Of a stretch of 64,000 nucleotides of DNA, positions 6,578-46,600 are shown in pieces (the first letter of the stretch is position 1; every line of letters begins with the position of its first letter). The notes under the pieces were generated by a model. That model saw nothing but the letters and a program-made list of their open reading frames with translations. It was not told the DNA's origin and did no database searches. The position numbers were made by a program, and so were the translations under genes. The DNA lies in IMG/VR virus record IMGVR_UViG_3300037882_003354, positions 186,001 through 250,000 of that record; one strand, given 5' to 3'.

Positions 6578-9500
6578 TTATCCGCCGGCTTCAATGGCTA
6601 ATATGAACGGAGTCATGTTAGCAAATAACGATTTAGTAAATGTTCGTCCAGATAGTACGCCAGTGGCTTGACTGATCACCAAGCCCGGTCCAATTCTAAA
6701 GTCACCATTCTGGTCAGTGCTGGTAAAGAACACCTTGCCAGTGTCCAACTGAACTGTTTCTTTTCCCTGCACAGGGTCAGCCAGTCCCACTTGTGGCAGA
6801 GCTCCGTAATCAGTACCGGCGCCCACATATTCAAACACATAACCAGATGCGCTGATATACGAACGTTGATAGAAATTCACATTGCAGCCATCTGGGAACA
6901 GATCAGTTCTTCTGACGGCTTCACCAAGATCCACCAGGTGGTGAGTGCGGTCTCTAGACCAGTAGCTCAGACCTGTGAACACGCTGTTGTAATTACCACC
7001 AGACTGCAAATCGTAAATCAATCTCCGCAAGATGAGTTTGAGGTCTCTGCGACACTTGACGTCATCATAGTCGGAAAAATTCAACCCTGGTCCAGCCAAT
7101 CCAGTGCTGCTGGATCCAATATAAGCACTGACTTCTGCTGCCAAGAAATCTAAATTTCGTTCTATCAGGGTTATGGCTGCCCCAGCGCCAGCAGGAATTG
7201 TGCCTGTCTTCAATCTCAATTTGCTGGTATCTGGAACTATTCCATTCGCCTGGGTAAAATCTGGTGCATCGATTATATCGTTGATGATTTTAAATCTTAG
7301 ATTGATAAACGGTGTAGCAGCCGCACCACCGCTGACCAGTAGATCTATTTGTTGCGTTGCAGTGGTCTGATAATAGTCCACAGAAGAGCTAGTATTATTA
7401 CTGATCACAAGGTTGGTCAAGGTGTTTAAATATACCAATGCAGCCAGATGATTTTCCACTTGATCGGGTGGTTGTACTAACGAAGCAGCAAGTGGTACCA
7501 ACGGGCTCGGGTCGCTGTATTCCAAACCATCCGCAGAAAGAATGTTAATTCCAGCCGGCTTGGGGTTTTCAGGATCAACTTTCACACTAATGGGATTCTC
7601 AGCTATGTTACTGCTCAACACCGTATAATAGGCGTTGCCGCAAAATAACAGAGTAAAATACCTGTCGTTTATTTGTCCGGGTTTGTTATCAGGATCCTGC
7701 CCGCCATTGGTCAATGCGTTGTTTAATGTCACGCTCCGATAGCCAATGTCAGTGACCACTGTACCCGAGGCAGCATACATCACTCCATTGGTGCCGGTCT
7801 GGGAGTTGTCTTGGTCCCTGATATAAACAGCATTGCCAACTGCAATACCTTCAGTATCAATTCCAGTGATGGTTATGGTGCCAGTATTCAATATACCAAT
7901 ATCAGGCAGGGCATTCAAGAAACCTGGGAAATTTTGTTCGTTACGGTAGGGACCCAGGTCACCGTTGAAATCACGAAATGCGTCCGGTGGCTCCACTTCC
8001 ATGACCAAGGATATGTGAGGGCGGTCAGCCGTGTCTGGCAGGAACACCTGAACCCTGGCATTGTTGGGCCAGAAACCGTTGGGATAATATTGATTGTCCC
8101 CTTCGTTCTCAATCTCGTCGATCTTGACCCCCGCCAGGTCGCGTTTGAACCTTGGTGGACTGTTGGGATATGCTCGGAATGCAGGGTTATAAATTGTGCC
8201 CGAGAATTTACGCTTGCCATAACCCTTGCTCAACAGGCAAATATCGCCAAAGTTGGCATTACTGTTGACGATGGACGCAATACCGCCGCTGTCAGTTTGC
8301 ACACCCACTGAGGAGAAGATGGTGAACACGGACACCAACTGGGCATAGCCGTCATTGGTGATATGAATTCCGCGGCCGCCTTGTGTCAACTGAGTATATG
8401 CGTCATACACGAATGACTGAATGGGCGAACGACTGCTGACCACTTTGCCATCCACCAGGCTGCCGCCCATGCCACCTATGGGGTCTACTTTTCGTTGATT
8501 CCAAGTGGTGGTCGTGTTGGTGTATGCCAAACTTAATTCTTCAACTTCAAAGTCACGCTTGGGGAACACCAAGACATCTCCAAAATACAGTGTGGCATTG
8601 TTGCCAAATCCTATGGTGGGGGTGTCCAGTCCAATCAAGAATGTTCCAGTAGTGGCCGAAGTCACACTGGTCACCCGAGTGGCTATTTTTGTATCCAGTC
8701 CGTTGATGCCAGTTAGTGAAAATAGTCCACCACCAGCATACACTGGCGGTGCGTATAATGGCCCACGCTCAATGATGGTGGTGATGATGCTAAAATTACG
8801 CATTATTGCCTGCTGCGGCATGTAATCACCACCGTACTGGAAGAAGGTGTTGATCACCTGCTTGGCCACAGTGCCTGTTTGTGGTGTCACTGGTTGGTTG
8901 GCAATGATCTGCAGTGCAATGTCCCTGGCATGATTGAGAGCCAGGGTGGTTGTGGTTTCCTGACCAGTGACATAATTGTACCCGGCGTTCCAATAGGAGA
9001 CTCCAGCCTCTATGGACTTCTGATTGCCACCCAGCAAGATGTCCTGACTCACTGCGTCAATAATTAGTCCGGTGTCTCTGTAACATTTTTCTTGGTTGTA
9101 GTTAAAAGAATTGGGATTCTCAGTATTATTGATATACTGTATGACTTCTGCTGCAATGAATGCCTTGTTGGCATTCAATATTTTAAAGGCGTTCATTGCC
9201 ATGCCTAGGTCGTCGGCAGCAACGAGCGAGATGGGGCGTAACGCTTGCGCTGCACCAGGGCCATCGTCGATTATGGTGTTAATTATATTAATTGCTGCAG
9301 CCAAGGCAGCTGCCGTGGCTGCATTGCTACTAACGAATGAAGAGGTGTTGGCTTGAAGTACAGTGGTTTGTAAAGGAACTATGACCCTATTTTGTATAAT
9401 GTCCCCAATAATGGTGGACATGTGTTCAAATGCGGCCACCGTTTGTGGTTGTTCGCCCTGGATAACTGAAGTAGAGGTGCTCAGATTATAATATGACAAT

Positions 9501-12500
9501 CCTGATTGTACACTCTGTCTGTTTCCACCATGTTTAAGGTCGAAACATATGCTGTCCACCATGTATCCAATGTCGCGTGTGCAAGTGTTCTCGTTGTAGG
9601 TTCCTTGAAATCCAGGATTGGTAGCGTTGATAAACGCAATAATTTCTTCTTGTAAATAACCCTTGTTGGCCTGCAACAAGTCGTAGGCATTGTAAACGCT
9701 GGCCAAGTTGCTGGGCAAGCCGTTGGGCACAATCCGGTCGCTCCATCCCAGATTATTGCCGCTGACTATGGTGATGATGTTGTCAAAGTTTGCATTGATG
9801 ATGGCAATTTCACGGTCGGTGGCAGGTTCTAGGTTGGTGATTTGTGTGGCTGTGGAATATCTAGAAACACCAACCAACACATCAGTGGCCGTGGTGATGT
9901 TTTGAATGATTTTGACACTCAACTCTTTTAGATATCCGATTGCTGAAACAGTGGGGTTCAGCTGGGTTAAAATTTCTCCAGTGTACCCGTCCTGATTCCA
10001 ATATTGCAAGCCCGCAAATGTTGACTGACTGTTTTCCACAGTGGGATAGAGTACGTCCAGAGCAATACTGTCAATGATCAATCCAGTGTCTCTCTTGCAC
10101 TTGATTTCGTTATATGGAAATTCCTTAAATGTATTATTGATCCAATTGATGGTGTCTTCTTGTATAAACGCGCGATTGGCCTGCATTAAAATCTCAGCAC
10201 TGACATATGCAGCATCTGGGCCAGGGCCAGTATACACCTCAGGAACAGAATCAGCGCCCTGCAGAATGGCATCAGTGACTATGTCAAATAGTTTGCTGAT
10301 GCTGCTGACACTGACTTCACCGCCAATCAACGCAGTGTTGATCACCTGCTGATTGGTGGCCGTGGTAATTTCTCCCTGCACAAAGAGATCCGTGCACGGG
10401 GTATTGGTCACCACCTTTTGACACAGCCCGCTCAGGTAATCAATGGCCGATGAGCATTGATTTTCCTGCCCGGCAATGTAACTGACTGCACCGTCATAGT
10501 ATGCCAATCCACTTTCCACAGACTTTTGATTGCCGCCAAACGCCACATCATACGCAATATTTTCAACTAAGATGCCTGAATCTCTATACGATTTTTCTCT
10601 GGAGAATTCAAAACTGTTAAACTGACTAGCGATGTAGGCTACGACCTCTGCCTGTATAAATGCACGGTTGGCCACCAGCAGATTGTATGCATTTTCCACC
10701 TGAACCGATTCATTCTTGGTCAAATTAATGGGCACCTTGGATGGGGCAAATTCCGAGCCCAGTCTAGTAATGTTGACGATGAGATCCATCTTATCCTGCA
10801 AACTGTTCACTTCATAAGTAGTTGCACTGGTTAAGTTTACCACCTGAGACGTGCCTGTTTGATACAGAGTGGCTGGTGGTTTGCATGTGACCACACTTTG
10901 AACAAGTGTCTTGATGTAGTTGTACGCGGCGCTGGTCCGTGGAATTTGTCCTGGTATGGTGGATGCGCCAGTATATCCGTAATAATAAAAACCGATTTTG
11001 GTAGATTGCTTGTTGCTGCTAATGGTGGTGGCACCGTGTAGCAAATCAAAGGCCACGCTATCAATAATATATCCTAGATCAATTCTGCATCTCGCCTCAT
11101 CGTACACGAATCCAGAAAGTAATCCAACTGTGATTTGTCGGTTGATCTCTTCAATCGTCTCTTCAATTACACCAGCCTTGCCGTTCACCAGGGCGGTATA
11201 AGCAGCCACCACACCAGCATCAGTGGTGGCTGTGGTATTCGATACAATGTTGCCTGGGGTAGCAGCAATTTGACGATTGTCATCACTGTTTATGATACCA
11301 CGTACCCTGTCGAACAAGGTCCCAACGTTTGCGCCATATGCACCAGCCAGAGTCTGGCAAAGACCATTGGCAAAGAAAACAGCTTCAAGAGTGGCGGTAG
11401 ACTGATCGCCAATGACTGATTGGGTATTGTTTTCTTGATTCCAGTTGCTCAGGCCAGCAAACACACTCTCACTAGTACTGTTGTACAATAAATCCAGGGC
11501 AATACTGTCTACGATCGATCCAACATCTGCACCGGTATACGCAGGCGCACTACCATTAAATGTGTTGTCGAGAAACTTGACCACTTGCTCTTGCATGAAT
11601 GGTTTGTTGGCCAACATCAAGGTGCGGGCATTAAAAAATCCTGGATTTTGTTGTCCCGGATTTATATACATGCCCTGTTCAATGGTGCCGGTGCTGACTT
11701 CCACCAGGAGAGTGGTGGTGTTGGACACCCAGGTGCCGGTGCCCACAGCCAGTGGCACTTGAACAGTCTGATTGGGCACAAACAAGGTGCCATCCTTCAA
11801 CCAAGGACCAGACAGATTGGTACAGTTTTGAATGTAGGGTGAGTGGAATATGTCAATACGGGCATCGCCTTCCAGTGGGGGATAGGCAGTGGCATATGCT
11901 CCACGGTTGAATCTGGGATCATAAACACCTTCCAGTAATCCACTACGTCCATTGAGGAATTGCATGAATGCCAGATAGCAGCCGGAGTTCATGTGGAACA
12001 AGTCCTGCGTCTTGTTAATGGGTTCAATACTGGTGGTTCTAATATCGGAACCCATGACGCTGGTATAAGGTTTCAATTGCAGCGGATTGTCTTCCAGATA
12101 GGTGCCGGCGCTGACTTGAATTTGTGTGCCCGGCTGATAGTATGGGCTGTTGATTGCACCCCCCACGGTACGGCAGGCGCGGCTGGCATCCAGTGCCCGC
12201 CCATCGTTGGTGTCGTTGCCGTCCATGGTCACATAAAGCACATTGGTCACCACAGGTGCTGTGCCTATGGGTTTCTGACCCAGCACGCGAATGTCTCCCA
12301 CTATCTCAGTCAGTCTGCTTTCAGGTTTGATCTGTATGGGGCCGCTGGTGCTCTCTATGATCTTGGTGTACAGCTGATCCACATACTCGGCACCGCCTAT
12401 GTGCACATCTCCGCCTATGCCCACGCCGCCAGTGACTGTGAACGCTCCAGTGGTGGTGCTGGTACTCGACGCAGTGGATGTCACTGCCATTTGTTCCACG

Positions 12501-13150
12501 ACCAATTTTCCAGTGAATGGGTTGTATGTCAACCCACCCTCAACGTCAGTACCGTTGGTGTTGTCAGTGAACAAATATCCAATTCCGTTGGGATTTCGAC
12601 TGAATGTTGGATAAAATGTAGCATCCACGTTGGTGGCCGTGATCAACAACTGCAAGGAGGTGGTGGCTTGTGCCACTCGTCCGTAGATGAATCCACCAAC
12701 GTTTAAATCTTTTTGTATGCCTACACCGCCGGCAATAAAAACAGCACCCTGCTGTCGTTGCAGATCGGCTGCCTCCCGTCCCAAAAGATCCTGACCATAT
12801 ACATCCTCAGCCAGAGGGATTCCGAAAGGATTGTCCACATTGTCATCGTTGGCTTTGATGATCATGGTACCGGTGTTGCCAACCACGGCAATGGTGCCAG
12901 TTATGGCAGTGTCACCACCCACATTGAGGTTCTTGGTGATGCCCACACCACCGTTGACCACCAGTGCACCCGTGGCACTTGATACTGACTCTGATGTATC
13001 CTGAACAATGGTGGGGCCGGCAATAGTCAGGTTACCAGTGACGAATGTATCTGTGGAATCTATGTAGATTTTCCCGGTGGGCGACGATACCGCCGTGTCC
13101 CCCTTGGGGGTTACAACTCTGGTTCCGGATACTCTGATCACTGTGGCCAT
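6578..13150 (-). CDS. Large virion structural protein (2190 aa): fibre motifs, beta-helix entry motif and seven helical repeats
   Basis: VLYVTMDGNDTNDG...ACRTVGGA motif and repeated KCxRDxGxIIDSIAxDLxxGGNxxSxxxGLxY(W/Y). SD AAAGGA and a TAAATA motif lie upstream. Confidence 0.75.
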   Translation of the reverse strand: MATVIRVSGTRVVTPKGDTAVSSPTGKIYIDSTDTFVTGNLTIAGPTIVQDTSESVSSATGALVVNGGVGITKNLNVGGDTAITGTIAVVGNTGTMIIKANDDNVDNPFGIPLAEDVYGQDLLGREAADLQRQQGAVFIAGGVGIQKDLNVGGFIYGRVAQATTSLQLLITATNVDATFYPTFSRNPNGIGYLFTDNTNGTDVEGGLTYNPFTGKLVVEQMAVTSTASSTSTTTGAFTVTGGVGIGGDVHIGGAEYVDQLYTKIIESTSGPIQIKPESRLTEIVGDIRVLGQKPIGTAPVVTNVLYVTMDGNDTNDGRALDASRACRTVGGAINSPYYQPGTQIQVSAGTYLEDNPLQLKPYTSVMGSDIRTTSIEPINKTQDLFHMNSGCYLAFMQFLNGRSGLLEGVYDPRFNRGAYATAYPPLEGDARIDIFHSPYIQNCTNLSGPWLKDGTLFVPNQTVQVPLAVGTGTWVSNTTTLLVEVSTGTIEQGMYINPGQQNPGFFNARTLMLANKPFMQEQVVKFLDNTFNGSAPAYTGADVGSIVDSIALDLLYNSTSESVFAGLSNWNQENNTQSVIGDQSTATLEAVFFANGLCQTLAGAYGANVGTLFDRVRGIINSDDNRQIAATPGNIVSNTTATTDAGVVAAYTALVNGKAGVIEETIEEINRQITVGLLSGFVYDEARCRIDLGYIIDSVAFDLLHGATTISSNKQSTKIGFYYYGYTGASTIPGQIPRTSAAYNYIKTLVQSVVTCKPPATLYQTGTSQVVNLTSATTYEVNSLQDKMDLIVNITRLGSEFAPSKVPINLTKNESVQVENAYNLLVANRAFIQAEVVAYIASQFNSFEFSREKSYRDSGILVENIAYDVAFGGNQKSVESGLAYYDGAVSYIAGQENQCSSAIDYLSGLCQKVVTNTPCTDLFVQGEITTATNQQVINTALIGGEVSVSSISKLFDIVTDAILQGADSVPEVYTGPGPDAAYVSAEILMQANRAFIQEDTINWINNTFKEFPYNEIKCKRDTGLIIDSIALDVLYPTVENSQSTFAGLQYWNQDGYTGEILTQLNPTVSAIGYLKELSVKIIQNITTATDVLVGVSRYSTATQITNLEPATDREIAIINANFDNIITIVSGNNLGWSDRIVPNGLPSNLASVYNAYDLLQANKGYLQEEIIAFINATNPGFQGTYNENTCTRDIGYMVDSICFDLKHGGNRQSVQSGLSYYNLSTSTSVIQGEQPQTVAAFEHMSTIIGDIIQNRVIVPLQTTVLQANTSSFVSSNAATAAALAAAINIINTIIDDGPGAAQALRPISLVAADDLGMAMNAFKILNANKAFIAAEVIQYINNTENPNSFNYNQEKCYRDTGLIIDAVSQDILLGGNQKSIEAGVSYWNAGYNYVTGQETTTTLALNHARDIALQIIANQPVTPQTGTVAKQVINTFFQYGGDYMPQQAIMRNFSIITTIIERGPLYAPPVYAGGGLFSLTGINGLDTKIATRVTSVTSATTGTFLIGLDTPTIGFGNNATLYFGDVLVFPKRDFEVEELSLAYTNTTTTWNQRKVDPIGGMGGSLVDGKVVSSRSPIQSFVYDAYTQLTQGGRGIHITNDGYAQLVSVFTIFSSVGVQTDSGGIASIVNSNANFGDICLLSKGYGKRKFSGTIYNPAFRAYPNSPPRFKRDLAGVKIDEIENEGDNQYYPNGFWPNNARVQVFLPDTADRPHISLVMEVEPPDAFRDFNGDLGPYRNEQNFPGFLNALPDIGILNTGTITITGIDTEGIAVGNAVYIRDQDNSQTGTNGVMYAASGTVVTDIGYRSVTLNNALTNGGQDPDNKPGQINDRYFTLLFCGNAYYTVLSSNIAENPISVKVDPENPKPAGINILSADGLEYSDPSPLVPLAASLVQPPDQVENHLAALVYLNTLTNLVISNNTSSSVDYYQTTATQQIDLLVSGGAAATPFINLRFKIINDIIDAPDFTQANGIVPDTSKLRLKTGTIPAGAGAAITLIERNLDFLAAEVSAYIGSSSTGLAGPGLNFSDYDDVKCRRDLKLILRRLIYDLQSGGNYNSVFTGLSYWSRDRTHHLVDLGEAVRRTDLFPDGCNVNFYQRSYISASGYVFEYVGAGTDYGALPQVGLADPVQGKETVQLDTGKVFFTSTDQNGDFRIGPGLVISQATGVLSGRTFTKSLFANMTPFILAIEAGG

Positions 13151-13781: not shown

Positions 13782-14636
13782 TTACGAGTTGGCAATACTC
13801 ACTGTGCCAGTGGTGGCCGCATCGATGGACCAGTTGGCAACTGCACCATTGGCATATTCAAAACTACCATTAACTGTAAACTGAGTTAGCACTGCTCTTC
13901 TAGCAGTCAACTTGGTGACAAAATAGGTGCTGGCATTGACGTCTGTGGCGACCAGGTTCATTTGACCTTCCGTTAAACTGCCTGTTGCTGTGGAAGCCAA
14001 TCTGCATATGCCGGTGGCTGTGGTGCGCACCAGGTAGCGGGTGCTGGATTCTTGCTTGACAATGTCACCAGTTTGACCACTGCCACCGCCTGGCACGAAT
14101 GCACCCACAGATAATCCATTGGCACGACCTGTGGTCAGTACAGTGGAGGAAACAGCAGCCGTGGTGGGTGAGTCCCTGAAACTGATTGATCCACTGACGG
14201 TGCTGGCGTTATTCAGGGTGACATTGACCAGTCCTGACTCAATGGAGGAAACATAAGTAGGGCTGGCATTGATACCTGTACCAGTCACTTGCATGCCTGT
14301 GAAAATGCCGGCGGTGGTAACATAAACAATACTGGTTCCGGTAGTACCAGTTCCTGCCACTACAACCCCAGTGGCCGTGGTGATGGTCATGGTGGCCGTG
14401 GAAATATATCCAGATCCATTGTTGGTCATGGTGATGCTGGAAAAATTACGGTTGGCAAACACCGGGGTACCAGTTGCAGTGACCCCACCTGGAATGCTGG
14501 GTGCACTGAATGTCACAGTGGCGCCGGATGAATAATTTGCACCGGTGTTGGAAAAGTTAACTGAGGCAATGCCCTCACCACCAATACCGCCGGCGGTCAG
14601 TTCACCGAAAAACTTCTTTTTAATTGGACGTCCCAT
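13782..14636 (-). CDS. Thr/Gly-rich virion protein downstream of major capsid (possible head decoration; likely start MGRPIKKKFFG)
   Basis: SD GAAGGAG precedes ATG 14636. Beta-rich composition with an ITMTNNGSGY-type motif. It has its own promoter and terminator. Confidence 0.6.
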   Translation of the reverse strand: MGRPIKKKFFGELTAGGIGGEGIASVNFSNTGANYSSGATVTFSAPSIPGGVTATGTPVFANRNFSSITMTNNGSGYISTATMTITTATGVVVAGTGTTGTSIVYVTTAGIFTGMQVTGTGINASPTYVSSIESGLVNVTLNNASTVSGSISFRDSPTTAAVSSTVLTTGRANGLSVGAFVPGGGSGQTGDIVKQESSTRYLVRTTATGICRLASTATGSLTEGQMNLVATDVNASTYFVTKLTARRAVLTQFTVNGSFEYANGAVANWSIDAATTGTVSIANS

Positions 14637-14726
14637 TTTATTTTCTCCTTCAGAAAAACACGGCGTTCTAGGCCGTACGCGGTTGGATTTCCGCATAAAA
14701 TTCACATGATTGTAAATTATACCTGG

Positions 14727-24328: not shown

Positions 24329-24942
24329 ATCTTTTTGTCCAAGAACTTACTGTGAAATATCACAGATTCTGACGTGGTCGTACGGTTGGGATTGTTAGGG
24401 TTGGCCACATGCGTGCGGCTAGTGGGTAGTCTAGTAACTGTACCACCTGTACTAGACGTTGGGTTTAATTGATTTGCCATCTGCGCCATGGCACCACCAG
24501 CTGGCGCAGCGGCCGGTTTAGCTGCCTGCGCAGAACCCAATTGTTTTTGCAGGAGTGCTAATATGCGTTGCTTGCCCTTGGCGTCCAACTGATTGATGTT
24601 AGTTTTGACTTGGTTATACAATGATGGTGCAGCCGCTGGCTGCGGTGTCGTCCCAGGGGTAGAGGTTGCTGGAGCAGTCGCAGACTGTGCTGTTGCTGAG
24701 GGAGCAGTTGTAGACGCAGGCGCTGTCCCAGTTGCATCATCTCCTGCACCAGCTACATAGTTCTTGCCTGCTTGGTATCCTGTCTTGACAGCACTCCCAA
24801 GTCCAGCCACACCGCCGGCAACAGCACCAACGCCCTTGGCGGCAGTACCGACAGCTTTGCCTATACCAGCACCAATTTTATTCAGAATTGGTCCTTCCTC
24901 AACCGGCTCGGTGTTTTCTATAATTAAGTCATGTATTCTCAT
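24325..24942 (-). CDS. Hypothetical low-complexity protein, possible internal head protein
   Basis: 205 aa, Ala/Gly/Thr/Pro-rich, N-terminus MRIHDLIIE. SD GAGG and TAAATA at 24966-24971 lie upstream. Confidence 0.6.
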   Translation of the reverse strand: MRIHDLIIENTEPVEEGPILNKIGAGIGKAVGTAAKGVGAVAGGVAGLGSAVKTGYQAGKNYVAGAGDDATGTAPASTTAPSATAQSATAPATSTPGTTPQPAAAPSLYNQVKTNINQLDAKGKQRILALLQKQLGSAQAAKPAAAPAGGAMAQMANQLNPTSSTGGTVTRLPTSRTHVANPNNPNRTTTSESVIFHSKFLDKKI

Positions 24943-24986
24943 ATAAACCTCTAGGTCAATGCTTTTATTTATGACCTATTGAGGGG

Positions 24987-25029
24987 AAGTGAACTCCGTT
25001 CACTTGCTTCATCGCTGGCGCTCGAAGCA
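24987..25029. repeat. Two adjacent inverted repeats
   Basis: AAGTGAAC-TCC-GTTCACTT (24987-25005) and TGCTTC-N13-GAAGCA (25005-25029). Confidence 0.7.
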
Positions 25030-25084
25030 TTTTTACAAAACACTAACATAATTATATCACCAGGTGTACGGCGAAGCGGAGTTG

Positions 25085-25445
25085 GTATTATCTAGATTAA
25101 GCGGTCACACTTAGCCCACTCGGGGCGAGAGTGTTTGTGAACATTATCTGAGTAGCACAGTCACATAGCGTTAGAGCATTACAGAGGCGGTTGTCCGGTA
25201 CCTCGAGCTCCGTCTTAACAACGGCAGTCAACAAAACATACGCTATCATGCTTGCTGACCCAGGGTTTTTCTCCCTTCATTGGGCCTTTTTAAATTACGT
25301 TCAAACAATCAAACCGCGGCATTTTGCGATCTTCGTCCTGTAAAGGATAGTGATTGAGTGCTCCCTTCAGCGGAGAGTCTTCCGTTCCAGTGACCCTAGG
25401 TCCTGTTGTCATGGGCACCCGATATTTGCCGGTGCTAGCCTATAC
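25085..25445 (-). ncRNA. Candidate large structured non-coding RNA, family not recognised; boundaries approximate
   Basis: Lies in the only long ORF-free tract of the window (24943-25459). About ten helices can be drawn by eye, with G-U pairs valid only on the minus strand and a 7-bp loop-to-distal pairing. Confidence 0.65.
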
Positions 25446-25459
25446 TGAAAAAAGTTGCC

Positions 25460-25885
25460 TTAGAGTTTTTTAATGTGCGAGCCATGTACACGGACACTAA
25501 TTTGCCCGTTGTAATAATCATTAGATTCCAAAACTTTGTGTTCAAACTGAAGTCTTGCTTCAATGTAAGAACACTCTGCCTTGGATTTACAGTAGTACAG
25601 TATCTCTCGCTTGAATTTGTCGGTGCCTATGGTGTTGATATCAGCGGTTAGTTCTACGCTGGATCCATAATAGTCTTGCCAATCGGAGTCAATCTTGCTC
25701 CTAATTTTTTTTCGTTTCTTGGTGCCGTTCTTCAACTTCACAGTCTTGTAGGTCGTTTTACTAAATTTTGCTAGTTTTTTGCCTATGTATTTGCGTCCTG
25801 TGACCATATTGGTTATAAGATAAACATAACCAACACAGTCCTCAGGTAATTCTTCAACTATAGTATTTTCAAAATACCAAGTCAT
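25460..25885 (-). CDS. Minimal GIY-YIG family nuclease (catalytic domain only)
   Basis: GYVYLITNMVTGRKYIGKK, YYGSS, conserved Glu (SYIEARLQ) and Asn (YYNGQI). 141 aa. Confidence 0.85.
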   Translation of the reverse strand: MTWYFENTIVEELPEDCVGYVYLITNMVTGRKYIGKKLAKFSKTTYKTVKLKNGTKKRKKIRSKIDSDWQDYYGSSVELTADINTIGTDKFKREILYYCKSKAECSYIEARLQFEHKVLESNDYYNGQISVRVHGSHIKKL

Positions 25886-25888
25886 CTA

Positions 25889-26086
25889 TTACTTGGCTGC
25901 CTTGGCCTCTTTACGAGCATTTTTTTCTGCTGTAATTTCGTTGCGACGAGCCTTGATCAATTTGCCCATTTCGGCCAGAGCCTTGCGAGCGCGAGCACCT
26001 GCTGCTGAATTGCCGCCGGTGAACTTTTCGTCCTCGGCTAAAAATTCATCAAAGTGCTTTTTTAATTCGGTTGCTGTTGATTCCAT
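25889..26086 (-). CDS. Small basic protein, histone H1-like Hc1 family
   Basis: EKFTGGNSAAGARARKALAEMGKLIKARRNEI matches the Hc1-type GNKAAxxRxRK core. SD AAGGA upstream. Confidence 0.7.
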   Translation of the reverse strand: MESTATELKKHFDEFLAEDEKFTGGNSAAGARARKALAEMGKLIKARRNEITAEKNARKEAKAAK

Positions 26087-26366
26087 ATTGTTCTTCCTTT
26101 TTTACTTTTCTATCAGCGACTTTTTTAGTCTTGACGGCTTGCGCCTCCAGTTTGCGTTGGTCCCTGCGAGCATTTGACACGCTGACAGTGGCCTCGGCCA
26201 GAGTTTTTTGCATTTTAGTCAGTCGACGCAATTCGCGACGAAGTATCACACCCGCCTCCACGGTGACATTTCCAACAAATAATTGATGTTGATTATGAAA
26301 ATCCACCATGTTTTCTACATACTGCATGTATAAATTCTGATATTTTTCCAGCTCATCTTTAAACAT
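26049..26366 (-). CDS. Hypothetical helical basic protein, possible diverged Hc1-like paralogue
   Basis: 105 aa; FVGNVTVEAGVILRRELRRLTKMQK aligns loosely with the neighbouring gene. Confidence 0.5.
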   Translation of the reverse strand: MFKDELEKYQNLYMQYVENMVDFHNQHQLFVGNVTVEAGVILRRELRRLTKMQKTLAEATVSVSNARRDQRKLEAQAVKTKKVADRKVKKEEQYGINSNRIKKAL

Positions 26367-26437
26367 AAATTACAATATTATTAGATATGTACATGTAAAT
26401 TTATCTTTTTCAGGCAAACATTCATCTTATTCTCGGA

Positions 26438-40620: not shown

Positions 40621-43600
40621 ATGGCAACTAAGATCATTAAGTCAATCAATCTACTACCGGAATTTTTACGTTCGGAAAAAAATTCAAAATTTTTATCCAG
40701 CACAATTGATCAGCTGATTCAACCACCACAGCTGGAGCGTATAGACGGGTACATTGGATCAAAACTGACCCCCACTTATAATTCAACGTCTGATGTATAC
40801 ATACCTGAGTCGCTGCCACTGCGCCGGGACTATCAATTGGATCCTGCTCTGGTCATTAACGACGCTGCGGAAACGCCACGCGATGTCATTGCACTTGATG
40901 ACCTAATCAATGAAATAAAAACCAAAGGTGGGATAAACAACAATCTGGACCGAATGTTTCGTTCGGAGTTTTACTCCTACGACCCACACATCGATTGGGA
41001 TAAACTGATAAATTATGCGCAATACTACTGGTTGCCGGTCGGGCCAGACATAATTACAATCACCGGTCAGCAGAGTAATTCCACCAGCACCTATGTGGTT
41101 CGCGACAACCCGCAAGATTCGGCATTTATTTTCAACCCCAATGGGTTGATTGAGGATCCGTTGATCACCCTGTACAACGGCAGTACCTATCGCTTTGAAA
41201 TATCTTCCAAGCACAAGTTTTATATCAAGACAGCACCGTCTGAGGGATCCGACGATTTATATAATTTTGGTGTAACCAATAATGGCACCTCGAGTGGCAT
41301 CATTACACTTGTGGTAAATCAATACACACCCATGACGCTGTATTATGTGGCCGGGGATCAAAAATTTGCAGCTGGTGAGTTTGTAATCAAGGACATCACC
41401 CAAGATTCCGCTGTGGATGTTGATGCTGAAATTGTGGGTAAGAAGAATTATATATCAGGTACCGGCATCGCTCTAACCAATGGCATGAAGATTAAATTTG
41501 GTGGCGACGTTTCTCCAGTATATTATCAAAATAAAGAATTCTTTGTTGAAGGTGTGGGACGAGCCATTACATTGATCGATTATACAACATTGAATACTCC
41601 TGATCGAATTGCCTCGATCTTTGATGAAGACTTTGACGCAAATCCATTTGATGAATACCCCTTTGACAATTTTAAAAACCTACCATTAGCGCCTGAATAC
41701 ATGACTGTCAATCGTGGCAGTCGAGACCTAAACCCCTGGACACGATATAATCGTTGGGTGCATCGTGATGTCATAGAGCTTTCTGCCAAGTTCAATGGAC
41801 GCGAGCCAGTTTTCCCTCAAAAGCTGAGAGCCAAGCGGCCTATTATTGAATTTAAAGCCAATCTGGCGTTGTACAACTTTGGAACCCAGGCCATTGGCAG
41901 TGTCGACCTCATTGATACAGAGACCAAGGATGCATTCAGCACTGTGTCAGGATCTGCTGGCTATCATGTTGACGGGGTGTTGTTGCAACAAGGCCACCGA
42001 GTGATATTCAACGCAGATTCGGATGCTGATGTGCGCGGCAGGGTTTATCAGGTCAATTATGCAACTTATAATAAAAAACTGACTCTTGAACTCAAAATAG
42101 TCAGTGACACCGTGCCGGCTGCATTTTCGTCCACTGTGATTAATACTGGTGACACCTATGCCGGTACCAATTGGTGGTATGACGGGTCTGTTTGGAGATA
42201 CGCACAGCAGCACACCAGTCTGAATCAGCCACCTCTGTTTGATTTATTTGACAATCAGGGTTACAGTTATAGCGATCCTGATGAGTATTTGACAAATTTT
42301 TCCGGAAACAAGATTTTTTCTTACGAGGTCGGCACTGGTGCAACTGATGCAGTGTTGGGCATTCCGTTAAAATATCGCAATAGCGTGGGTGTTGGCAGTT
42401 ATCTGTTCAAGAATTATTTCATGACAGAATCCATTTCAATTACGGAAAATCAGACAGACTACACCATTCCCACGTCAATGGCCTACTGTAAGTTTGCGAA
42501 TGCAGCCGGAGATGTCTATAAAAATGTGTGGGCACCAGCAGAAGAATATCAGATCCCCATACTTCAATTTCAGGCCCTTGAGTCGTCCACAGCAAGTGTG
42601 GCCGTGACATGCATAGATGCGCCCAGCACCACTAACATGACAGTTGATGTATACGTGGATGACAACAAGTTACCGACGTCCCAATATACCACGTCAGTTG
42701 TTGCTGGCACTTATTTGGTTAATTTTACTACACTGATACCCACGGGCAGTCGAGTTTTATTCAAAATATACTCTGACAAGATTCCTAACGATCGCGGATA
42801 TTACGAAACACCCATAAGCCTTACCAACAACCCGTTGAACGGTGTGATTGAATCAATGACACTGTCAGACCTCGGCGATCATTTGCACACCATGGTGAAC
42901 AGAACTCCGTCGTTCTCTGGCCAAGTGCTGGGCAGCAATAACCTGCGGGATTTGTCTGACATAGAAAAATATGGATATAGACTGGTGTCCAACGCCAACC
43001 CCATGCCGTTTGCTCAAATGTTCATTGGAAAAAAAGAGCATAGCGCCGTTGATGCAATTGTCAAAGCAGGAGATCAGTATAATCAATTTAAGATGATACT
43101 ACTCAAGCAAATTTCATTGTTGAGTGAGCAAGTTAATCCTGTTGATGCACTTGACATTGCAATGAAGGAAATCAACAAAGATAAAGATTTACGCACTCCC
43201 TATTATTTGTCTGACATGATAGCATATGGCTCGGACAAGACTGTCAGGACTTGGAGAGTGGCCAACAGCCGCATCAAGCAATATTCCCTGTCGTCCTCCT
43301 TTGATCCATCTGTGTTGGGCATGCGTTCAGTGCTGGTCTATCTCAATGGTGAGCAATTGTTGTTGAATCAAGATTACTCGTTTGACACAGTTGACTCCTT
43401 GGTCACCCTGCTGGTTGATCTTAAAGTTGGCGATCAACTCACAGTCAATGATTATTATAGCACTATTGGTTGCTATGTTCCTCCGACCCCTACTAAATTG
43501 GGACTGTATCCAAAATATAGTCCTTCGAAGTTTTTAGATAATACCTATGCCAAGGAGCCCATCAACGTCATTCAAGGGCATGATGGCAGCATCATGGTGG

Positions 43601-46600
43601 CATATAATGATTTTAGGGACGACATATTAATAGAATTTGAAAAACGTGTTTATAACAACATTAAGGCTGAGTATAGGAGAGAGTTATTTGATATCAACAC
43701 GGTCATGCCTGGATCTTTTAGGCCCACTGCATACACTCTTTCAGAAATAACTCATGTTTTACAGTCAGATTTCATCAAGTGGGTGGGATTCTACGGAATA
43801 GACTACACGACCAATGCAGTTGACCTCGACAATCCGTTCACCTGGAATTATTCTGGTGCGTACTGTGCGGCCCTGGCGCAGCCAGTGTCTGGATACTGGC
43901 GAGCAGTGTATAAGAAATTTTATGATACTGACCGTCCCCACACCAATCCCTGGGAAATGCTGGGATTTTCAGAGCAGCCCGACTGGTGGGAAACCTGGTA
44001 TGGACCAGCGCCATATACCTCGGGAAATAAAATACTATGGAACGACATTGAGTCAGGCACAATACGCCAAGGGGTAAATTCTGGGACTAACTTGACCTAC
44101 GCTCGTGCAGGCTTGAGTTTGATAATTCCTGTGGACCAATATGGCAACCTGTTGTCTCCTGATGTTCTTTTGGGTGGCGCTGGTGGAAATCGAGATAAAA
44201 TTGCCAACGTCACACCCTACAATCTAAGACAATCCTGGAAGTTTGGCGACCAATCTCCCGCTGAGACCGCCTGGAGGCGCAGCAGTTATTGGCCATTTGC
44301 AGTGCAACGGCTACTGGCTCTTTTGAACCCTGCTGTGTACGCGTCGCTAATGTACGACGTCAGTCGAATGACCAAGAATATCGCGGGACAGTGGACCTAT
44401 GGCAACCAGCAAGAGTTTTTAAAAATTAATAAAGTCATTGTATCTGACGACTCCGCCAGATTGTCGGCCGGTTATGGCGAGTATGTGAGAGAAATTGGCA
44501 AGCAACGTAGCAGTAACTATGTTCAAGAACTCATGCAAGATCTTGAATATGCCAATCTCAATCTATTTTATAAAGTGGGTGGATTTGTCAGTAAAGATAA
44601 AATAAGATTGGTGATAGATTCAGTTGACCCCAACAGCCCCAGTCCCGGCGCACTGTTGCCGCCTGAGGACTACAAACTAATCTTGAACGTCAGCAACCCC
44701 ATTCAATCCATAGGAATTTCTGGAGTAATTGTACAAAAGATAGACGGGAAATTTTTAGTCAAGGGATACGATCGATATAAACCCTATTTCAGTGTTTACG
44801 TCCCCACTCGAAATTCAAATACCCCAACCATCACAGTGGGCGGAGTCAGTGAGTCGTATGTGTCCTGGGATAATACATCCAATGATGGTGGCAACGGGTT
44901 ATCGGCCACCGACACCACCAGCGCCACTGCTGCAGCCACTGGTCACTTTTATCAAAAGGGCCAGATAGTTCTATACGGTGCAAATTTTTACCGAGTCACA
45001 GTCAGCCATCAAGCAGAATCCGCATTCAACCCGGCTTATTATCAAAGATTGGCCACTGTGCCCACCAGGGGGGGCGCAACTGTGCAAATGGCTGCGTCAT
45101 TCAGCAGCACTGTCAATGAAATACCCTACGGTACTGAATTCGACACCATACAGCAGGTGTATGATCTGTTGGTTGGATATGGGGCCTGGTTAACGGACCA
45201 GGGATTTGTATTTGATGAATACAGCACTGATTTTAATTCAACAATTGACTGGAATTTCTCTGCCAAGGAATTTTTGTATTGGTCCACACAAAATTGGGCC
45301 AACAACAGCGTTATAACACTGAGTCCGTTTTCCAATAGAATCAAATACAGTTTGCCCAACAGTGTGGTTGATGATGTTTTTAGTAGTTTTTATGAGTACA
45401 GCATACTACAAGCCAATGGAGTATCGCTGCCCAAGCAGAATATTGATGTAGATAGAAATGACGGCGTGTGTACTATTTCTACAAACGACGCCAACAGCGG
45501 CATGTATTTTGCAGTGATTAATTCAGTGCAAAAAGAACATGCCATGGTGTTCAACAACGCAACCATGTTTAATGACACGGTGTATAGTATTGAAACTGGA
45601 TATCGACAAAAACGCATGTTGATGTCTGGATTCAGGACAGCCAATTGGGACGGCGATTACTTCAGTCCCGGATTTGTGTATGATACGGCCACCATCAGCA
45701 CCTGGGAACCCTATACTGGATACCAGCCTGGATCGGTGGTACGCTATAAAAATGGAAATTACTATTCAGCAATTGGAAAACTAACCGGTTCCAAGACTTT
45801 TGATTTTACCAATTGGGTTTTACTTGGATCCAAGCCCATCGCTGGTCTACTGCCCAATTTTGATTATAAGATCAATCAGTTTGAAGATTTTTACAGCCTG
45901 GACACTGATAATTTTGATAGTGCACAGCAAAAAATGGCTCAGCATCTGATTGGATTCACACCCCGCAATTATCTTACAAATGTATTCACTGATCCCATCG
46001 CGCAATACAAGTTTTATCAGGGATTCATTAAAGAAAAAGGCACCCGTAATGCGGTGAGCAAATTGTCCAAGGCCAGTGTTCGTAACCTGCAGGGTGAAAT
46101 GACCTACACTGAGGAATGGGCATTTAGAATAGGTCAATACGGGTCCTATCAAACTTATCAAGAATTGGAAGTTCCGCTAACTGAGGGAAAATTTATAGAA
46201 AATCCCCAAGTGGTTAGTTTTGTGGATAACATACCGTCAGTAGCCAACGATTTAATTTATTACAGCACTGCCACTGACAGGATCATAGCACCAAATGACT
46301 ATGTTCCTGCCAGGTCGTTTGCACTGAATCCCGGCAGCTATCAGGACAATGACTTCCAATTGACCACTGCGGGATATGCTCGCACTGACGACGTGTTTGC
46401 CACTGCGTATAATGAAAACAGCCTGCTTGACATTGCCAATAGCAGGGCACTTGACGACGGTGATGTAATTTGGTTGGGATTTAAAAAAAATGGCGACTGG
46501 GATGTATTGCGATATACAAAATCCAAGTCCAGAGTCCTGGAAGTATCTGCCAGCCTACCAGGTAGTGAATTGACAGTAACCACCGACCTGTACCACGGAT

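What the first reader, a model, noticed from the sequence alone, without database searches (positions are those of the whole stretch)
25085..25445. Ornate ~360-nt pseudoknotted non-coding RNA in an otherwise wall-to-wall coding genome
Seen on the minus strand, 5' to 3': (1) GCACC/GGUGC hairpin (25415-25435); (2) CAG-GACC/GGUC-A-CUG (25388-25405); (3) CUCUC/GGGAG; (4) a three-way junction closed by CAAUCA/UGAUUG (25306-25356) holding UCCU/AGGA and GAUCGC/GCGGUU; (5) GGG-AGAAAAA-CCC; (6) a long stem GUCAGCAA-GCAUG/UAUGU-U-UUGUUGAC whose loop sequence AUAGCGU (25240-25246) is exactly complementary to distal ACGCUAU (25165-25171); (7) CCGU/ACGG; (8) GAGC/GCUC enclosing GAGG-UAC-CGG-ACAA-CCG-CCUC; (9) ACACU..GCCC/GGGC..AGUGU flanked by two AGAUAAU copies (25143-25149, 25087-25093). 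Many G-U pairs would be A-C mismatches on the other strand, which favours a minus-strand RNA over DNA cruciforms. It does not look to me like tRNA, tmRNA, RNase P or a group I/II intron. Inference: an unannotated large structured phage RNA (ribozyme, scaffold, guide or primer).
Basis: partly seen in the sequence, partly recalled or inferred. Interest (0 to 1): 0.9.

Follow-up and report, generated by a model that had tools for sequence, protein, structure and literature searches.

The report
Known phage RNA, longer than catalogued
The 360-base region is a real, heavily folded non-coding RNA of a freshwater T4-like giant phage, but it belongs to the already described 'Polynucleobacter-1' RNA family of unknown function; what is new is a 3' end piece with two short repeats that always change together.

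Summary

It is not a new RNA. Bases 25303-25440 are a full-length match to Rfam RF01718, Polynucleobacter-1 RNA (112 bits, threshold 37).

In 109 non-redundant homologues from phage contigs, 81 proposed pairs are 91% paired, against 75% after shuffling. 58 pairs show compensatory double changes, including all 7 pseudoknot pairs.

Beyond the published motif I find:
- two more pseudoknots;
- a 3' module of repeat, hairpin, repeat, whose two heptamers (AGAUAAU here) are identical in 109 of 109 RNAs across 12 variants;
- a consistent setting in T4-like freshwater phages, directly after a small stand-alone nuclease gene (GIY-YIG, sometimes a PD-(D/E)xK protein).

Function is still unknown. My best guess is a trans-acting RNA that presents two identical recognition strands. 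No partner was found, and transcription of this copy was not shown.

The parts
25086..25462 (-). Whole conserved RNA element, about 375 nt. Its 5' edge overlaps the stop codon of the upstream gene, inside a conserved UAAGGCAA.
   Evidence: blastn and nhmmer conservation limits. UARGGCAA is conserved upstream whatever the upstream gene is. No ORF: the median longest stop-free run is 36-48 codons, and lengths mod 3 are 35/37/37.
25303..25440 (-). 5' domain, a match to Rfam RF01718 Polynucleobacter-1 RNA (helices P1, P2, P3 and a three-way junction).
   Evidence: cmscan 112.2 bits against a gathering score of 37, E 1.5e-25, model positions 1-141 of 141.
25444..25448 (-). 5' tail UCAGU, pairing with GCUGA (25367-25371) in the loop of P3. 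This pseudoknot is in neither Rfam nor the 2010 alignment.
   Evidence: 5 pairs, 92.7% paired, 4 covary.
25415..25435 (-). P1 hairpin GCACC/GGUGC. The GC at 25438-25439 also pairs into its loop (25428-25429).
   Evidence: 99.4% paired, 5 of 5 pairs covary. The loop pairing is 100% paired with GC/AU exchange.
25306..25356 (-). Three-way junction closed by CAAUCA/UGAUUG. It holds CC/GG (plus C25350-G25334) and GAUCGC/GCGGUU.
   Evidence: Closing helix 95% paired, 4 pairs covary. Inner helix 94% paired, 4 pairs covary. C-G/G-C exchange at 25350/25334, and U.C/C.U exchange at 25347/25335.
25227..25259 (-). Long stem P6. Its loop AUAGCGU (25240-25246) forms the main pseudoknot.
   Evidence: Inner part 92% paired with 7 of 8 pairs covarying; outer 3 bp all covary.
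25165..25171 (-). ACGCUAU, the 3' strand of the main pseudoknot with 25240-25246.
   Evidence: 98.8% paired, 7 of 7 pairs with compensatory double changes. It is already drawn as SS_cons_1 in the 2010 alignment, without covariation support at that time.
25174..25222 (-). P8 (GAGC/GCUC) enclosing P9 (GAGGU/GCCUC). GUUGU (25218-25222) pairs with ACAAC (25190-25194) in the P9 loop, a further pseudoknot. The core GGUACCGGACAACCGCC is nearly invariant.
   Evidence: P8 97% paired, 4 of 4 covary. P9 100% paired. GUUGU:ACAAC 99% paired, 3 pairs covary, for example GUCAU/AUGAC.
25143..25164 (-). Repeat unit 1: box GUGAC (25160-25164), spacer, ACUC, heptamer AGAUAAU (25143-25149).
   Evidence: The heptamer is identical to that of unit 2 in 109 of 109 non-redundant RNAs, across 12 variants. 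The boxes mostly change together.
25107..25134 (-). P10 hairpin (GCCC/GGGC core, 25114-25126) between the two repeat units.
   Evidence: Every one of 138 distinct inter-repeat segments folds into a stem of at least 5 bp (mostly 8-12 bp). Stem sequences differ: GCCC, CCGU, CCCG and others.
25087..25108 (-). Repeat unit 2: box GUGAC (25104-25108), spacer, AUCU, heptamer AGAUAAU (25087-25093). Strong conservation ends here.
25460..25885 (-). Upstream gene: a 141-aa stand-alone GIY-YIG nuclease domain (SegE-like) with a basic beta-hairpin insert.
   Evidence: Pfam PF19835, E 1e-32. The best solved fold match to the model is the I-TevI catalytic domain 1LN0 (prob 0.99, TM 0.65). Motif residues are conserved in 127 distinct homologues.
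24987..25028 (-). Two-hairpin element downstream, with loop GAGCG-N-AGCGA. It may be the 3' end or terminator of the same transcript, or a separate leader.
   Evidence: Present 18-93 nt after repeat 2 in 90 of 139 loci, with covarying stems. No Rfam match.

Best explanation
Shown: this is a genuine non-coding RNA gene on the minus strand and a full-length member of the Polynucleobacter-1 RNA family.
- The 5' domain is what Rfam models.
- The middle 'tail' with its pseudoknot is as drawn in the 2010 description.
- About 85 nt at the 3' end (repeat unit, hairpin, repeat unit) have not been described.
- The RNA is carried once per genome by a large lineage of freshwater T4-like phages. It sits at the end of the SbcD-SbcC-small-nuclease gene block, directly after the nuclease's stop codon.

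Inferred:
- It is made as the tail of that operon's transcript, whole or processed.
- It folds into a compact, multiply pseudoknotted body.
- It works in trans, with the body holding out two copies of the same 7-nt strand (with a matching upstream box) that bind two copies or two sites of one partner.
- The partner is most simply a nucleic acid, because the two strands switch sequence freely but always together.

Likelihoods: identity and reality of the RNA about 0.95; the two-recognition-strand mechanism about 0.25-0.3.
For: Family membership:
- cmscan 112 bits, full model length.
- The published alignment shows the same tail and pseudoknot.

Real RNA structure:
- 81 pairs are 91.1% paired, against 74.7 +/- 0.26% in 500 shuffles.
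- 58 pairs show double compensatory changes.
- 16 of the 20 strongest APC-corrected mutual-information pairs, out of 65,545 column pairs, fall in the proposed helices, and 3 more are the repeat pairs.
- No ORF and no codon periodicity.
- G-U content favours the minus strand.

Lineage and setting:
- 178 phage loci have the RNA.
- Synteny is SbcD-SbcC-...-nuclease-RNA, followed by a T4 baseplate gene on the other strand.
- Of 161 RNA loci with enough upstream sequence, 138 have the GIY-YIG gene adjacent, 11 have it with a 243-1833 nt insert, and 6 have a PDDEXK_15 nuclease instead.
- There is one copy in the 322-kb genome.

Two identical recognition strands:
- The heptamers are identical in 109 of 109 RNAs at four variable positions, with 12 variants and at least 45 state changes on a tree built without those columns.
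- 160 of 166 loci overall have identical heptamers.
- The Polynucleobacter chromosome copy printed in the 2010 file also has matching heptamers, AGCGAAA twice.
- No Watson-Crick partner lies inside the RNA.

Transcription of relatives is hinted at but not shown: one 168-nt metatranscriptome contig runs from a relative's GIY-YIG 3' end into the RNA, and 14 RNA runs hold a conserved piece.
Against: - No partner was found: not within +/-10 kb, and there is no second paired site nor any copy or complement of 9 nt or more in the whole phage genome.
- Transcription of this copy is not shown. Metatranscriptome contigs cover the neighbouring Hc1 gene at 99-100% identity but not this RNA.
- Whether repeat 1 sits in a hairpin loop could not be established: flank complementarity is no better than controls (4.28 vs 4.09 bp).
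- The RNA's 5' and 3' ends are not mapped. A conserved two-hairpin element further downstream may belong to it.
- Single-sequence folding energy is unremarkable.
Confidence: 0.55

Rival explanations
1. The RNA is the targeting or regulatory subunit of the stand-alone nuclease encoded just upstream (GIY-YIG, or PD-(D/E)xK in some phages). The nuclease lacks a DNA-binding domain, the RNA supplies specificity through its two identical heptamers, and the complex cuts both strands or two sites of a short target.
For: - The nuclease is a bare catalytic domain: 141 aa, Pfam covers residues 3-129, and the fold matches only the I-TevI catalytic domain.
- 155 of 161 RNA loci have a small nuclease gene upstream on the same strand.
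- A non-homologous nuclease (PDDEXK_15) occupies the same slot in 6 loci.
- The stop codon lies inside the conserved 5' edge of the RNA.
- The heptamers behave like freely reprogrammable recognition strands.
Against: - The same GIY-YIG family occurs in 454 cultured phage records, mostly T4-like cyanophages. The three examined (Melnitz, phiN3, S-SRM01) have no room for the RNA and no match to it.
- Unrelated genes are inserted between nuclease and RNA in 11 loci.
- No protein column tracks the heptamer (MI/H at most 0.23 for the two A/G positions and 0.43 overall).
- The same RNA works beside two unrelated nuclease folds, which argues against an intimate complex.
- Seven nucleotides is short for a guide.
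Confidence: 0.12
2. It is a self-processing RNA (ribozyme). The two units ACUC|heptamer and AUCU|heptamer are its two processing sites, releasing or circularising the roughly 56-nt hairpin segment.
For: - Size, multiple pseudoknots and many invariant unpaired nucleotides (for example GGUACCGGACAACCGCC and GGACGAAGAU) are typical of ribozymes.
- Two sites with the same local sequence flank a discrete hairpin.
Against: - No match to any ribozyme or intron family in Rfam at E up to 10.
- No internal guide covaries with the sites.
- No read-level evidence of ends or joints could be obtained.
Confidence: 0.1
3. It acts only in cis. Either it is a 3' UTR structure that stabilises or terminates the SbcCD-nuclease operon transcript, or it is a leader regulating the downstream gene.
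For: - It starts at the stop codon of the upstream gene and no own promoter is evident.
- Weinberg et al. rated it a possible cis-regulator.
Against: - About 375 nt with four pseudoknots and invariant junctions is far more than stability or termination needs.
- The downstream gene varies between loci and is often on the opposite strand.
- In this window a promoter-like TGATATAAT and a T4-late-like ATAAATA lie between the RNA and the next gene.
- The upstream gene can be replaced or separated by inserts while the RNA stays.
Confidence: 0.1
4. The repeats mark a template: a polymerase copies from repeat 2 to repeat 1 and jumps back, as in telomerase or DRT2 rolling-circle reverse transcription. 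This would require the two repeats to be identical.
For: Strict identity with free variation is what a template jump demands.
Against: - No reverse transcriptase in the complete 322-kb genome.
- Unit length varies without any frame constraint.
- Nothing else points to cDNA.
Confidence: 0.03
5. It is a DNA-level element, such as a replication origin with iterons or recombination sites, rather than an RNA.
For: - Direct repeats that change together resemble iterons bound by one protein.
- The region lies in a DNA-metabolism block.
Against: - Compensatory changes follow RNA rules with 11% G-U, so the complementary strand pairs worse.
- The pseudoknots have no DNA rationale.
- Cumulative GC skew has no extreme here.
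- The CUC and UCU flanks stay different, so the repeats are not being homogenised as DNA.
Confidence: 0.03

Closest known systems
Polynucleobacter-1 RNA motif (Rfam RF01718; Weinberg et al. 2010, Genome Biol 11:R31)
   Same: - Full-length, high-scoring match of the 5' domain.
- The tail helices P5, P6, P8 and P9 and the 7-bp pseudoknot match the published consensus structure.
- It lies downstream of the same kind of small gene.
- It comes from the same freshwater setting.
- Function unknown.
   Different: - The Rfam model stops after 141 nt.
- The published motif stops at the pseudoknot's 3' strand.
- Not described there: the repeat-hairpin-repeat 3' module, the 5'-tail:P3-loop pairing, and the GUUGU:ACAAC pairing.
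- The authors had 16 sequences and no covariation for the pseudoknot, and found none in purified phages. Here it sits in a complete 322-kb phage genome and 178 phage contigs.
Other large, ornate bacterial or phage RNAs of unknown function (GOLLD, ROOL)
   Same: Several hundred nucleotides, multiple pseudoknots, many invariant unpaired bases, often phage-borne, no known biochemical role (from my own knowledge of these families).
   Different: No sequence or structure match to their Rfam models. It is smaller. It has the paired heptamers, for which I know no counterpart in those RNAs.
Nuclease-associated guide RNAs (HEARO/omega RNA with IscB, TnpB reRNA)
   Same: A conserved structured RNA next to a small nuclease gene, with a short variable segment attached to a constant scaffold.
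   Different: - There, the guide is a single stretch of 16 nt or more at one end, and the protein family is fixed and never found without its RNA.
- Here there are two identical 7-nt segments, two unrelated nuclease folds, and the nuclease family is common without the RNA.
- No HEARO match.
Template RNAs with matching boundary repeats (telomerase RNA, DRT2 ncRNA)
   Same: Two short direct repeats that must be identical flank a defined segment.
   Different: No reverse transcriptase in the genome. The repeats here carry extra conserved boxes.

Membership tests
Polynucleobacter-1 RNA (RF01718) | Covariance-model score above Rfam's gathering threshold over the whole model | tested here: met
   112.2 bits against 37, model positions 1-141 of 141, E 1.5e-25.
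Polynucleobacter-1 RNA (RF01718) | Helices of the 5' domain (P1, P2, P3, three-way junction) kept by compensatory change | tested here: met
   87-99% paired, with 4-5 covarying pairs per helix in 109 homologues.
Polynucleobacter-1 RNA (RF01718) | Published 'tail': hairpin, long stem, nested P8/P9, and a 7-bp pseudoknot between the long stem's loop and the strand after P8 | tested here: met
   The consensus structure lines of the 2010 Stockholm file correspond to window helices at 25262-25275, 25227-25259, 25174-25210 and 25240-25246:25165-25171. All are supported by covariation.
Polynucleobacter-1 RNA (RF01718) | Lies downstream of a GOS11034 / P-SSM2_218-like gene | tested here: inconclusive
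   The upstream gene is a SegE-like GIY-YIG protein with homologues in 22 Prochlorococcus and 337 Synechococcus phage records. I did not check identity with P-SSM2 gene 218 itself.
Group I / group II introns, RNase P, tmRNA, tRNA | Match to the family's covariance model or ARAGORN | tested here: not met
   No hit at E up to 10 in 24900-25500. ARAGORN finds nothing.
HEARO / omega RNA (IscB) and other nuclease guide RNAs | Obligate pairing with one nuclease family, and a single long guide at the RNA's end | tested here: not met
   No Rfam HEARO hit. Two unrelated nucleases occupy the slot. The nuclease family is widespread without the RNA.
DRT2-type / telomerase-type template RNA | A reverse transcriptase encoded with the RNA | tested here: not met
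   PF00078 is absent from the complete genome.
Free-standing homing endonuclease with its target gene | Sporadic presence of the endonuclease among close relatives, and a DNA-binding domain | tested here: not met
   The nuclease is near-universal in the lineage and 72-85% conserved. There is one copy per genome. It is a catalytic domain only.

The most novel reading that the evidence does not exclude
The RNA is a programmable recognition module. Its two identical heptamers, each with a matching upstream box, specify a short nucleic-acid target for the adjacent domain-only nuclease (GIY-YIG or PD-(D/E)xK), working with SbcCD. The frequent concerted switching of the heptamers reflects an arms race with hosts or competing phages. 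This would be an RNA-guided GIY-YIG system of a kind not described.
Probability: 0.08. Interest if true: 0.9.

Novelty: new member of a known kind. Interest (0 to 1): 0.5.

Why it matters
Polynucleobacter-1 is one of the larger bacterial or phage RNAs that still has no function.

This work:
- places it firmly in complete T4-like freshwater phage genomes;
- shows that the catalogued model covers little more than a third of the molecule;
- supplies covariation proof for the main pseudoknot and two further ones;
- uncovers a feature that can be tested directly: two 7-nt strands that are always identical yet vary freely between phages.

That pattern is not explained by ordinary RNA pairing. It gives experimenters a handle (change one copy, both copies, or swap variants) on an RNA that is abundant in lakes.

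It also corrects a widespread mis-annotation of the neighbouring nuclease as 'NAD synthetase'.

Tried and rejected
- Single-sequence folding: MFE z-scores of -0.93 and -0.33 on the two strands are uninformative.
- RNAalifold on raw MAFFT alignments recovered only part of the structure and nothing for the 3' module, because of misalignment in length-variable parts. I used mutual information and pair counting in Python instead.
- My first DNA pattern was one base too long and gave only chance hits, L082-L103.
None is a homologue by nhmmer, so there is no host information.
- blastn against cultured phages found nothing.
- Partner search for the heptamers. The reverse complement is only about 1.6-fold enriched in flanks. 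The recurring sites are conserved coding sequence (SbcC, the start of the baseplate gene) that does not track the heptamer. Nothing was found in the whole genome.
- Protein co-variation with GIY-YIG: none.
- A hairpin enclosing repeat 1: not better than controls.
- Replication origin: no GC-skew extreme.
- Reverse transcriptase: absent.
- Ideas considered and dropped:
  - T4 gene-60-like ribosome hopping. The codon plus UAA/UGA and the roughly 50-nt gap fit, but there is no ORF, and divergent members carry CGAA in place of AUNA.
  - Anticodon-loop or T-loop pairing: position 37 and 58 rules are not met.
  - CsrA-type GGA sites: many variants lack GGA.
  - An integron attC or CRISPR mini-array: the repeat geometry is wrong.
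Full report
**What is there**

The window is bases 186001-250000 of a complete 322,512-bp phage genome with direct terminal repeats. Between a 141-aa gene (25460-25885, minus strand) and the next minus-strand ORF (start 24942) lie 517 nt without a credible ORF.

**It is a known family**

- cmscan against Rfam 15 gives a full-length match of 25303-25440 (minus) to RF01718, Polynucleobacter-1 RNA: 112.2 bits against a gathering score of 37, E 1.5e-25, model positions 1-141 of 141. Nothing else in 24900-25500 scores, even at E up to 10. ARAGORN finds no tRNA or tmRNA.
- The only paper in the library that names the motif is Weinberg et al. 2010 (PMC2864571).
- Its supplement says the motif occurs in environmental samples and in Polynucleobacter sp. 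[quoted passage not shown]
- The Stockholm file of that paper (supplementary file 101) carries a consensus structure that goes well beyond the 141 nt kept by Rfam. It has a hairpin, a long stem, two nested helices and a separate 7-bp pseudoknot line, drawn as the sub-families 'tail' and 'tailpknot'. The file has 16 sequences and no covariation marks on the pseudoknot.
So items 1-8 (item 7 excepted, see below) were published. The 85 nt after the pseudoknot's 3' strand appear in that file only as unaligned flank.

**Homologues**

- The upstream protein has at least 575 relatives at 72-85% identity in IMG/VR contigs, and 80 loci were fetched.
- A pattern from the invariant 3' core (CCGT...GGTAYMGGNYNACCGCC) found at least 120 further phage contigs.
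- An HMM of the first alignment hits 178 loci. Of these, 132 are near full length, and 109 remain after removing pairs above 95% identity (mean pairwise identity 0.67).

**Structure**

- Mutual information with average-product correction, computed blind to any structure, puts 16 of the top 20 of 65,545 column pairs into antiparallel Watson-Crick helices. Three more are the direct-repeat pairs.
- For 81 proposed pairs, 91.1% of cells are canonical or G-U, against 74.7 +/- 0.26% (maximum 75.5%) in 500 shuffles. 58 pairs have compensatory double changes.
- Sliding the 3' partner by one column drops most helices to 20-50% paired.
- The main pseudoknot (25240-25246 with 25165-25171) is 98.8% paired and all 7 pairs covary.
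- Two pairings are in neither Rfam nor the 2010 file:
  - the 5' tail UCAGU (25444-25448) with GCUGA (25367-25371) in the P3 loop: 92.7% paired, 4 of 5 pairs covary;
  - GUUGU (25218-25222) with ACAAC (25190-25194) in the P9 loop: 99.1% paired, 3 pairs covary.
- G-U pairs are 11.3% of cells, so the plus strand would be only 79.9% canonical.
- Coding is excluded. The median longest stop-free run is 36-48 codons in every frame. Lengths (362-465 nt) are spread evenly over the three residues mod 3. Column variability has no period of three.
- Single-sequence MFE is not better than shuffles.

**The undescribed 3' module**

- After the pseudoknot come a box GUGAC (25160-25164), a short spacer, ACUC and the heptamer AGAUAAU (25143-25149).
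- Next is a hairpin with a GCCC/GGGC core.
- Then come a second GUGAC (25104-25108), a spacer, AUCU and the same heptamer (25087-25093).
- The hairpin is universal: all 138 distinct inter-repeat segments fold into stems of at least 5 bp, usually 8-12 bp, with different stem sequences.
- The two heptamers are identical at all four variable positions in 109 of 109 non-redundant RNAs:
  - position 1: G 57 / A 52;
  - position 2: G 103 / A 3 / C 3;
  - position 5: A 55 / G 54;
  - position 7: U 80 / A 27 / G 2.
- There are 12 heptamer variants. On a tree built without these columns the heptamer changes state at least 45 times. Recombination of the whole module would inflate that count.
- Over all loci, 160 of 166 are identical. 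Four of the six exceptions are mis-hits of my regular expression. The other two are the most divergent members, L217 and L123 (one and two mismatches, heptamer core CGAA).
- The Polynucleobacter chromosome copy printed in the 2010 file also shows ACUC-AGCGAAA ... AUCU-AGCGAAA.
- The GUGAC boxes mostly change together too, while the CUC and UCU flanks never converge. Simple gene conversion therefore does not explain the pattern.
- No column in the RNA pairs with the heptamers.
- Their reverse complement is not consistently present within 10 kb.
- The 322-kb genome has no other copy or complement of 9 nt or more, and no second place with two heptamers within 400 nt.
- No GIY-YIG residue tracks them, and there is no reverse transcriptase.
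- I could not show that repeat 1 is enclosed by a local stem.

**Setting**

- The upstream gene is a SegE-type GIY-YIG domain (Pfam PF19835, E 1e-32, residues 3-129 of 141).
- Its AlphaFold model (pLDDT 86) matches only the I-TevI catalytic domain among solved structures (1LN0, prob 0.99) and has an added lysine-rich beta-hairpin.
- The GIY, YIG, Glu and Asn motif positions are conserved in 127 distinct homologues.
- It is single-copy in the genome.
- Further upstream lie a histone-like Hc1 gene, SbcC and SbcD.
- Across loci the order SbcD-SbcC-(variable small genes)-nuclease-RNA is kept. The next conserved gene is a T4 baseplate protein on the other strand.
- Of 161 RNA loci with at least 600 nt upstream, 138 have the GIY-YIG gene adjacent and 11 have it with an unrelated insert of 243-1833 nt. 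Six have instead a PF24608 'phage putative PDDEXK endonuclease' of about 170 aa, and six have neither by my test.
- Conversely, at least 64 of 74 close GIY-YIG loci have the RNA by nhmmer, and seven more carry a divergent version with matching ACAUGAA heptamers.
- A conserved UARGGCAA containing the upstream stop codon precedes the RNA whatever the upstream gene is.
- The protein family is much wider than the RNA: 454 cultured phage records at 48% identity or less, mostly T4-like cyanophages, often annotated 'NAD synthetase'. Melnitz, phiN3 and S-SRM01 have neither space for the RNA nor any match to it.

**Expression**

- Metatranscriptome contigs at 99-100% identity cover the Hc1 and neighbouring genes (25879-26379) but not this RNA.
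- One 168-nt contig of a relative runs from the end of its GIY-YIG gene into the first 49 nt of its RNA.
- Fourteen RNA runs from freshwater and salt-marsh samples hold a short conserved piece.
- Transcription of this copy is therefore not shown. Co-transcription with the nuclease gene is suggested for a relative.
- No sigma-70-like promoter is evident in front of the RNA.

**What follows the RNA**

- In 92 of 139 loci a CTTCG-containing motif lies about 9 nt after repeat 2. In this window it is followed by TGATATAAT (25051-25059).
- In 90 of 139 loci a two-hairpin element with loop GAGCG-N-AGCGA follows (here 24987-25028), and then a T4-late-promoter-like ATAAATA.
- In some loci the two-hairpin element comes only about 12 nt after repeat 2, so it may be the true 3' end of the transcript.
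- Reading the CTTCG motif as a T4 MotA-type middle promoter is my inference from general knowledge. It was not tested.

**Interpretation**

- Settled: this is a real structured RNA, a member of the Polynucleobacter-1 family, carried by T4-like freshwater phages.
- The function is open. Size, four pseudoknots and long invariant unpaired stretches argue for a molecule that binds something specific or catalyses something, not for a mere terminator or stabiliser.
- The concerted heptamers are most simply explained if both bind the same kind of partner by a mechanism that distinguishes A from G. That points to nucleic-acid recognition stricter than wobble pairing, or to a copying step. I favour two recognition strands for one trans partner (about 0.25-0.3).
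- A complex with the adjacent nuclease is attractive, but it is weakened by three findings: the nuclease is common without the RNA, genes are inserted between the two, and two unrelated nuclease folds occupy the slot. I put it at about 0.1.
- Self-processing at the two sites and a purely cis role are each about 0.1.
- A template-jump role and a DNA-level role are unlikely.

**Verdict**

Novelty is limited to a new member of a known family, plus previously undescribed parts of that family.

Noticed in passing
window 14634-14717 (-): Full-length match to Rfam RF02980, freshwater-2 RNA (71.5 bits against a threshold of 49.9), another environmental motif of unknown role, in the same phage.
   Followed up: no
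window 24987-25028 (-); also 90 of 139 related loci: A conserved two-hairpin element 18-93 nt after the RNA. The first hairpin has loop GAGCG-N-AGCGA and a covarying stem, the second is variable, and a T4-late-promoter-like ATAAATA follows (24966-24972). No Rfam match. It may be the RNA's 3' end or a separate leader.
   Followed up: partly
window 25051-25059 and 25071-25077 (-): An extended -10-like TGATATAAT lies 22 nt after a conserved GCTTCG motif. The motif sits about 9 nt after repeat 2 in 92 of 139 loci. It could be a T4 middle-type promoter between the RNA and the next gene; this is an untested inference.
   Followed up: no
L151, L156, L176, L126, L214, L217 (gene just upstream of the RNA): In these phage contigs the GIY-YIG gene is replaced at the same position by an unrelated small nuclease, Pfam PF24608 PDDEXK_15. 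In L126 an RNase H gene lies between it and the RNA.
   Followed up: partly
window 25889-26086 (-): A 65-aa histone H1-like Hc1 protein gene (PF07432, E 1e-12) in a phage. It is the part of this locus best covered by metatranscriptome contigs at 99-100% identity.
   Followed up: no
window 25455-25462 (-) and the same place in related loci: The stop codon of whatever gene precedes the RNA (GIY-YIG, PDDEXK_15, or inserted genes) lies inside a conserved UARGGCAA about 10 nt before the RNA's first pairing.
   Followed up: partly
L107:8516-8600: A natural variant lacks the pseudoknot's 3' strand, repeat 1 and the hairpin. The sequence runs from ...CUGUAAUGCU straight into ACUGAACA-AUCU-AGAUAAU, as if the segment between the two units had been deleted.
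   Followed up: no
L193:3911-4304 and 5169-5240: A related phage contig that carries the RNA also encodes a permuted tmRNA (RF04321, 92 bits) and a tRNA a few kb upstream.
   Followed up: no
GenBank phage records such as KR052482.1 and MW015081.1 (loci L225, L226): Homologues of the 141-aa GIY-YIG protein are widely annotated 'NAD synthetase' (also PHROG 447). Pfam and the fold match indicate a GIY-YIG nuclease domain.
   Followed up: partly
window 40621-54420 (+) and 6578-13150 (-): Very long ORFs of 4599 aa and 2190 aa. Not examined.
   Followed up: no
L012, L018-L020, L025, L026, L054: A sub-lineage with close GIY-YIG genes has an RNA too diverged for the HMM. It still shows the two units with identical heptamers, ACAUGAA.
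   Followed up: partly
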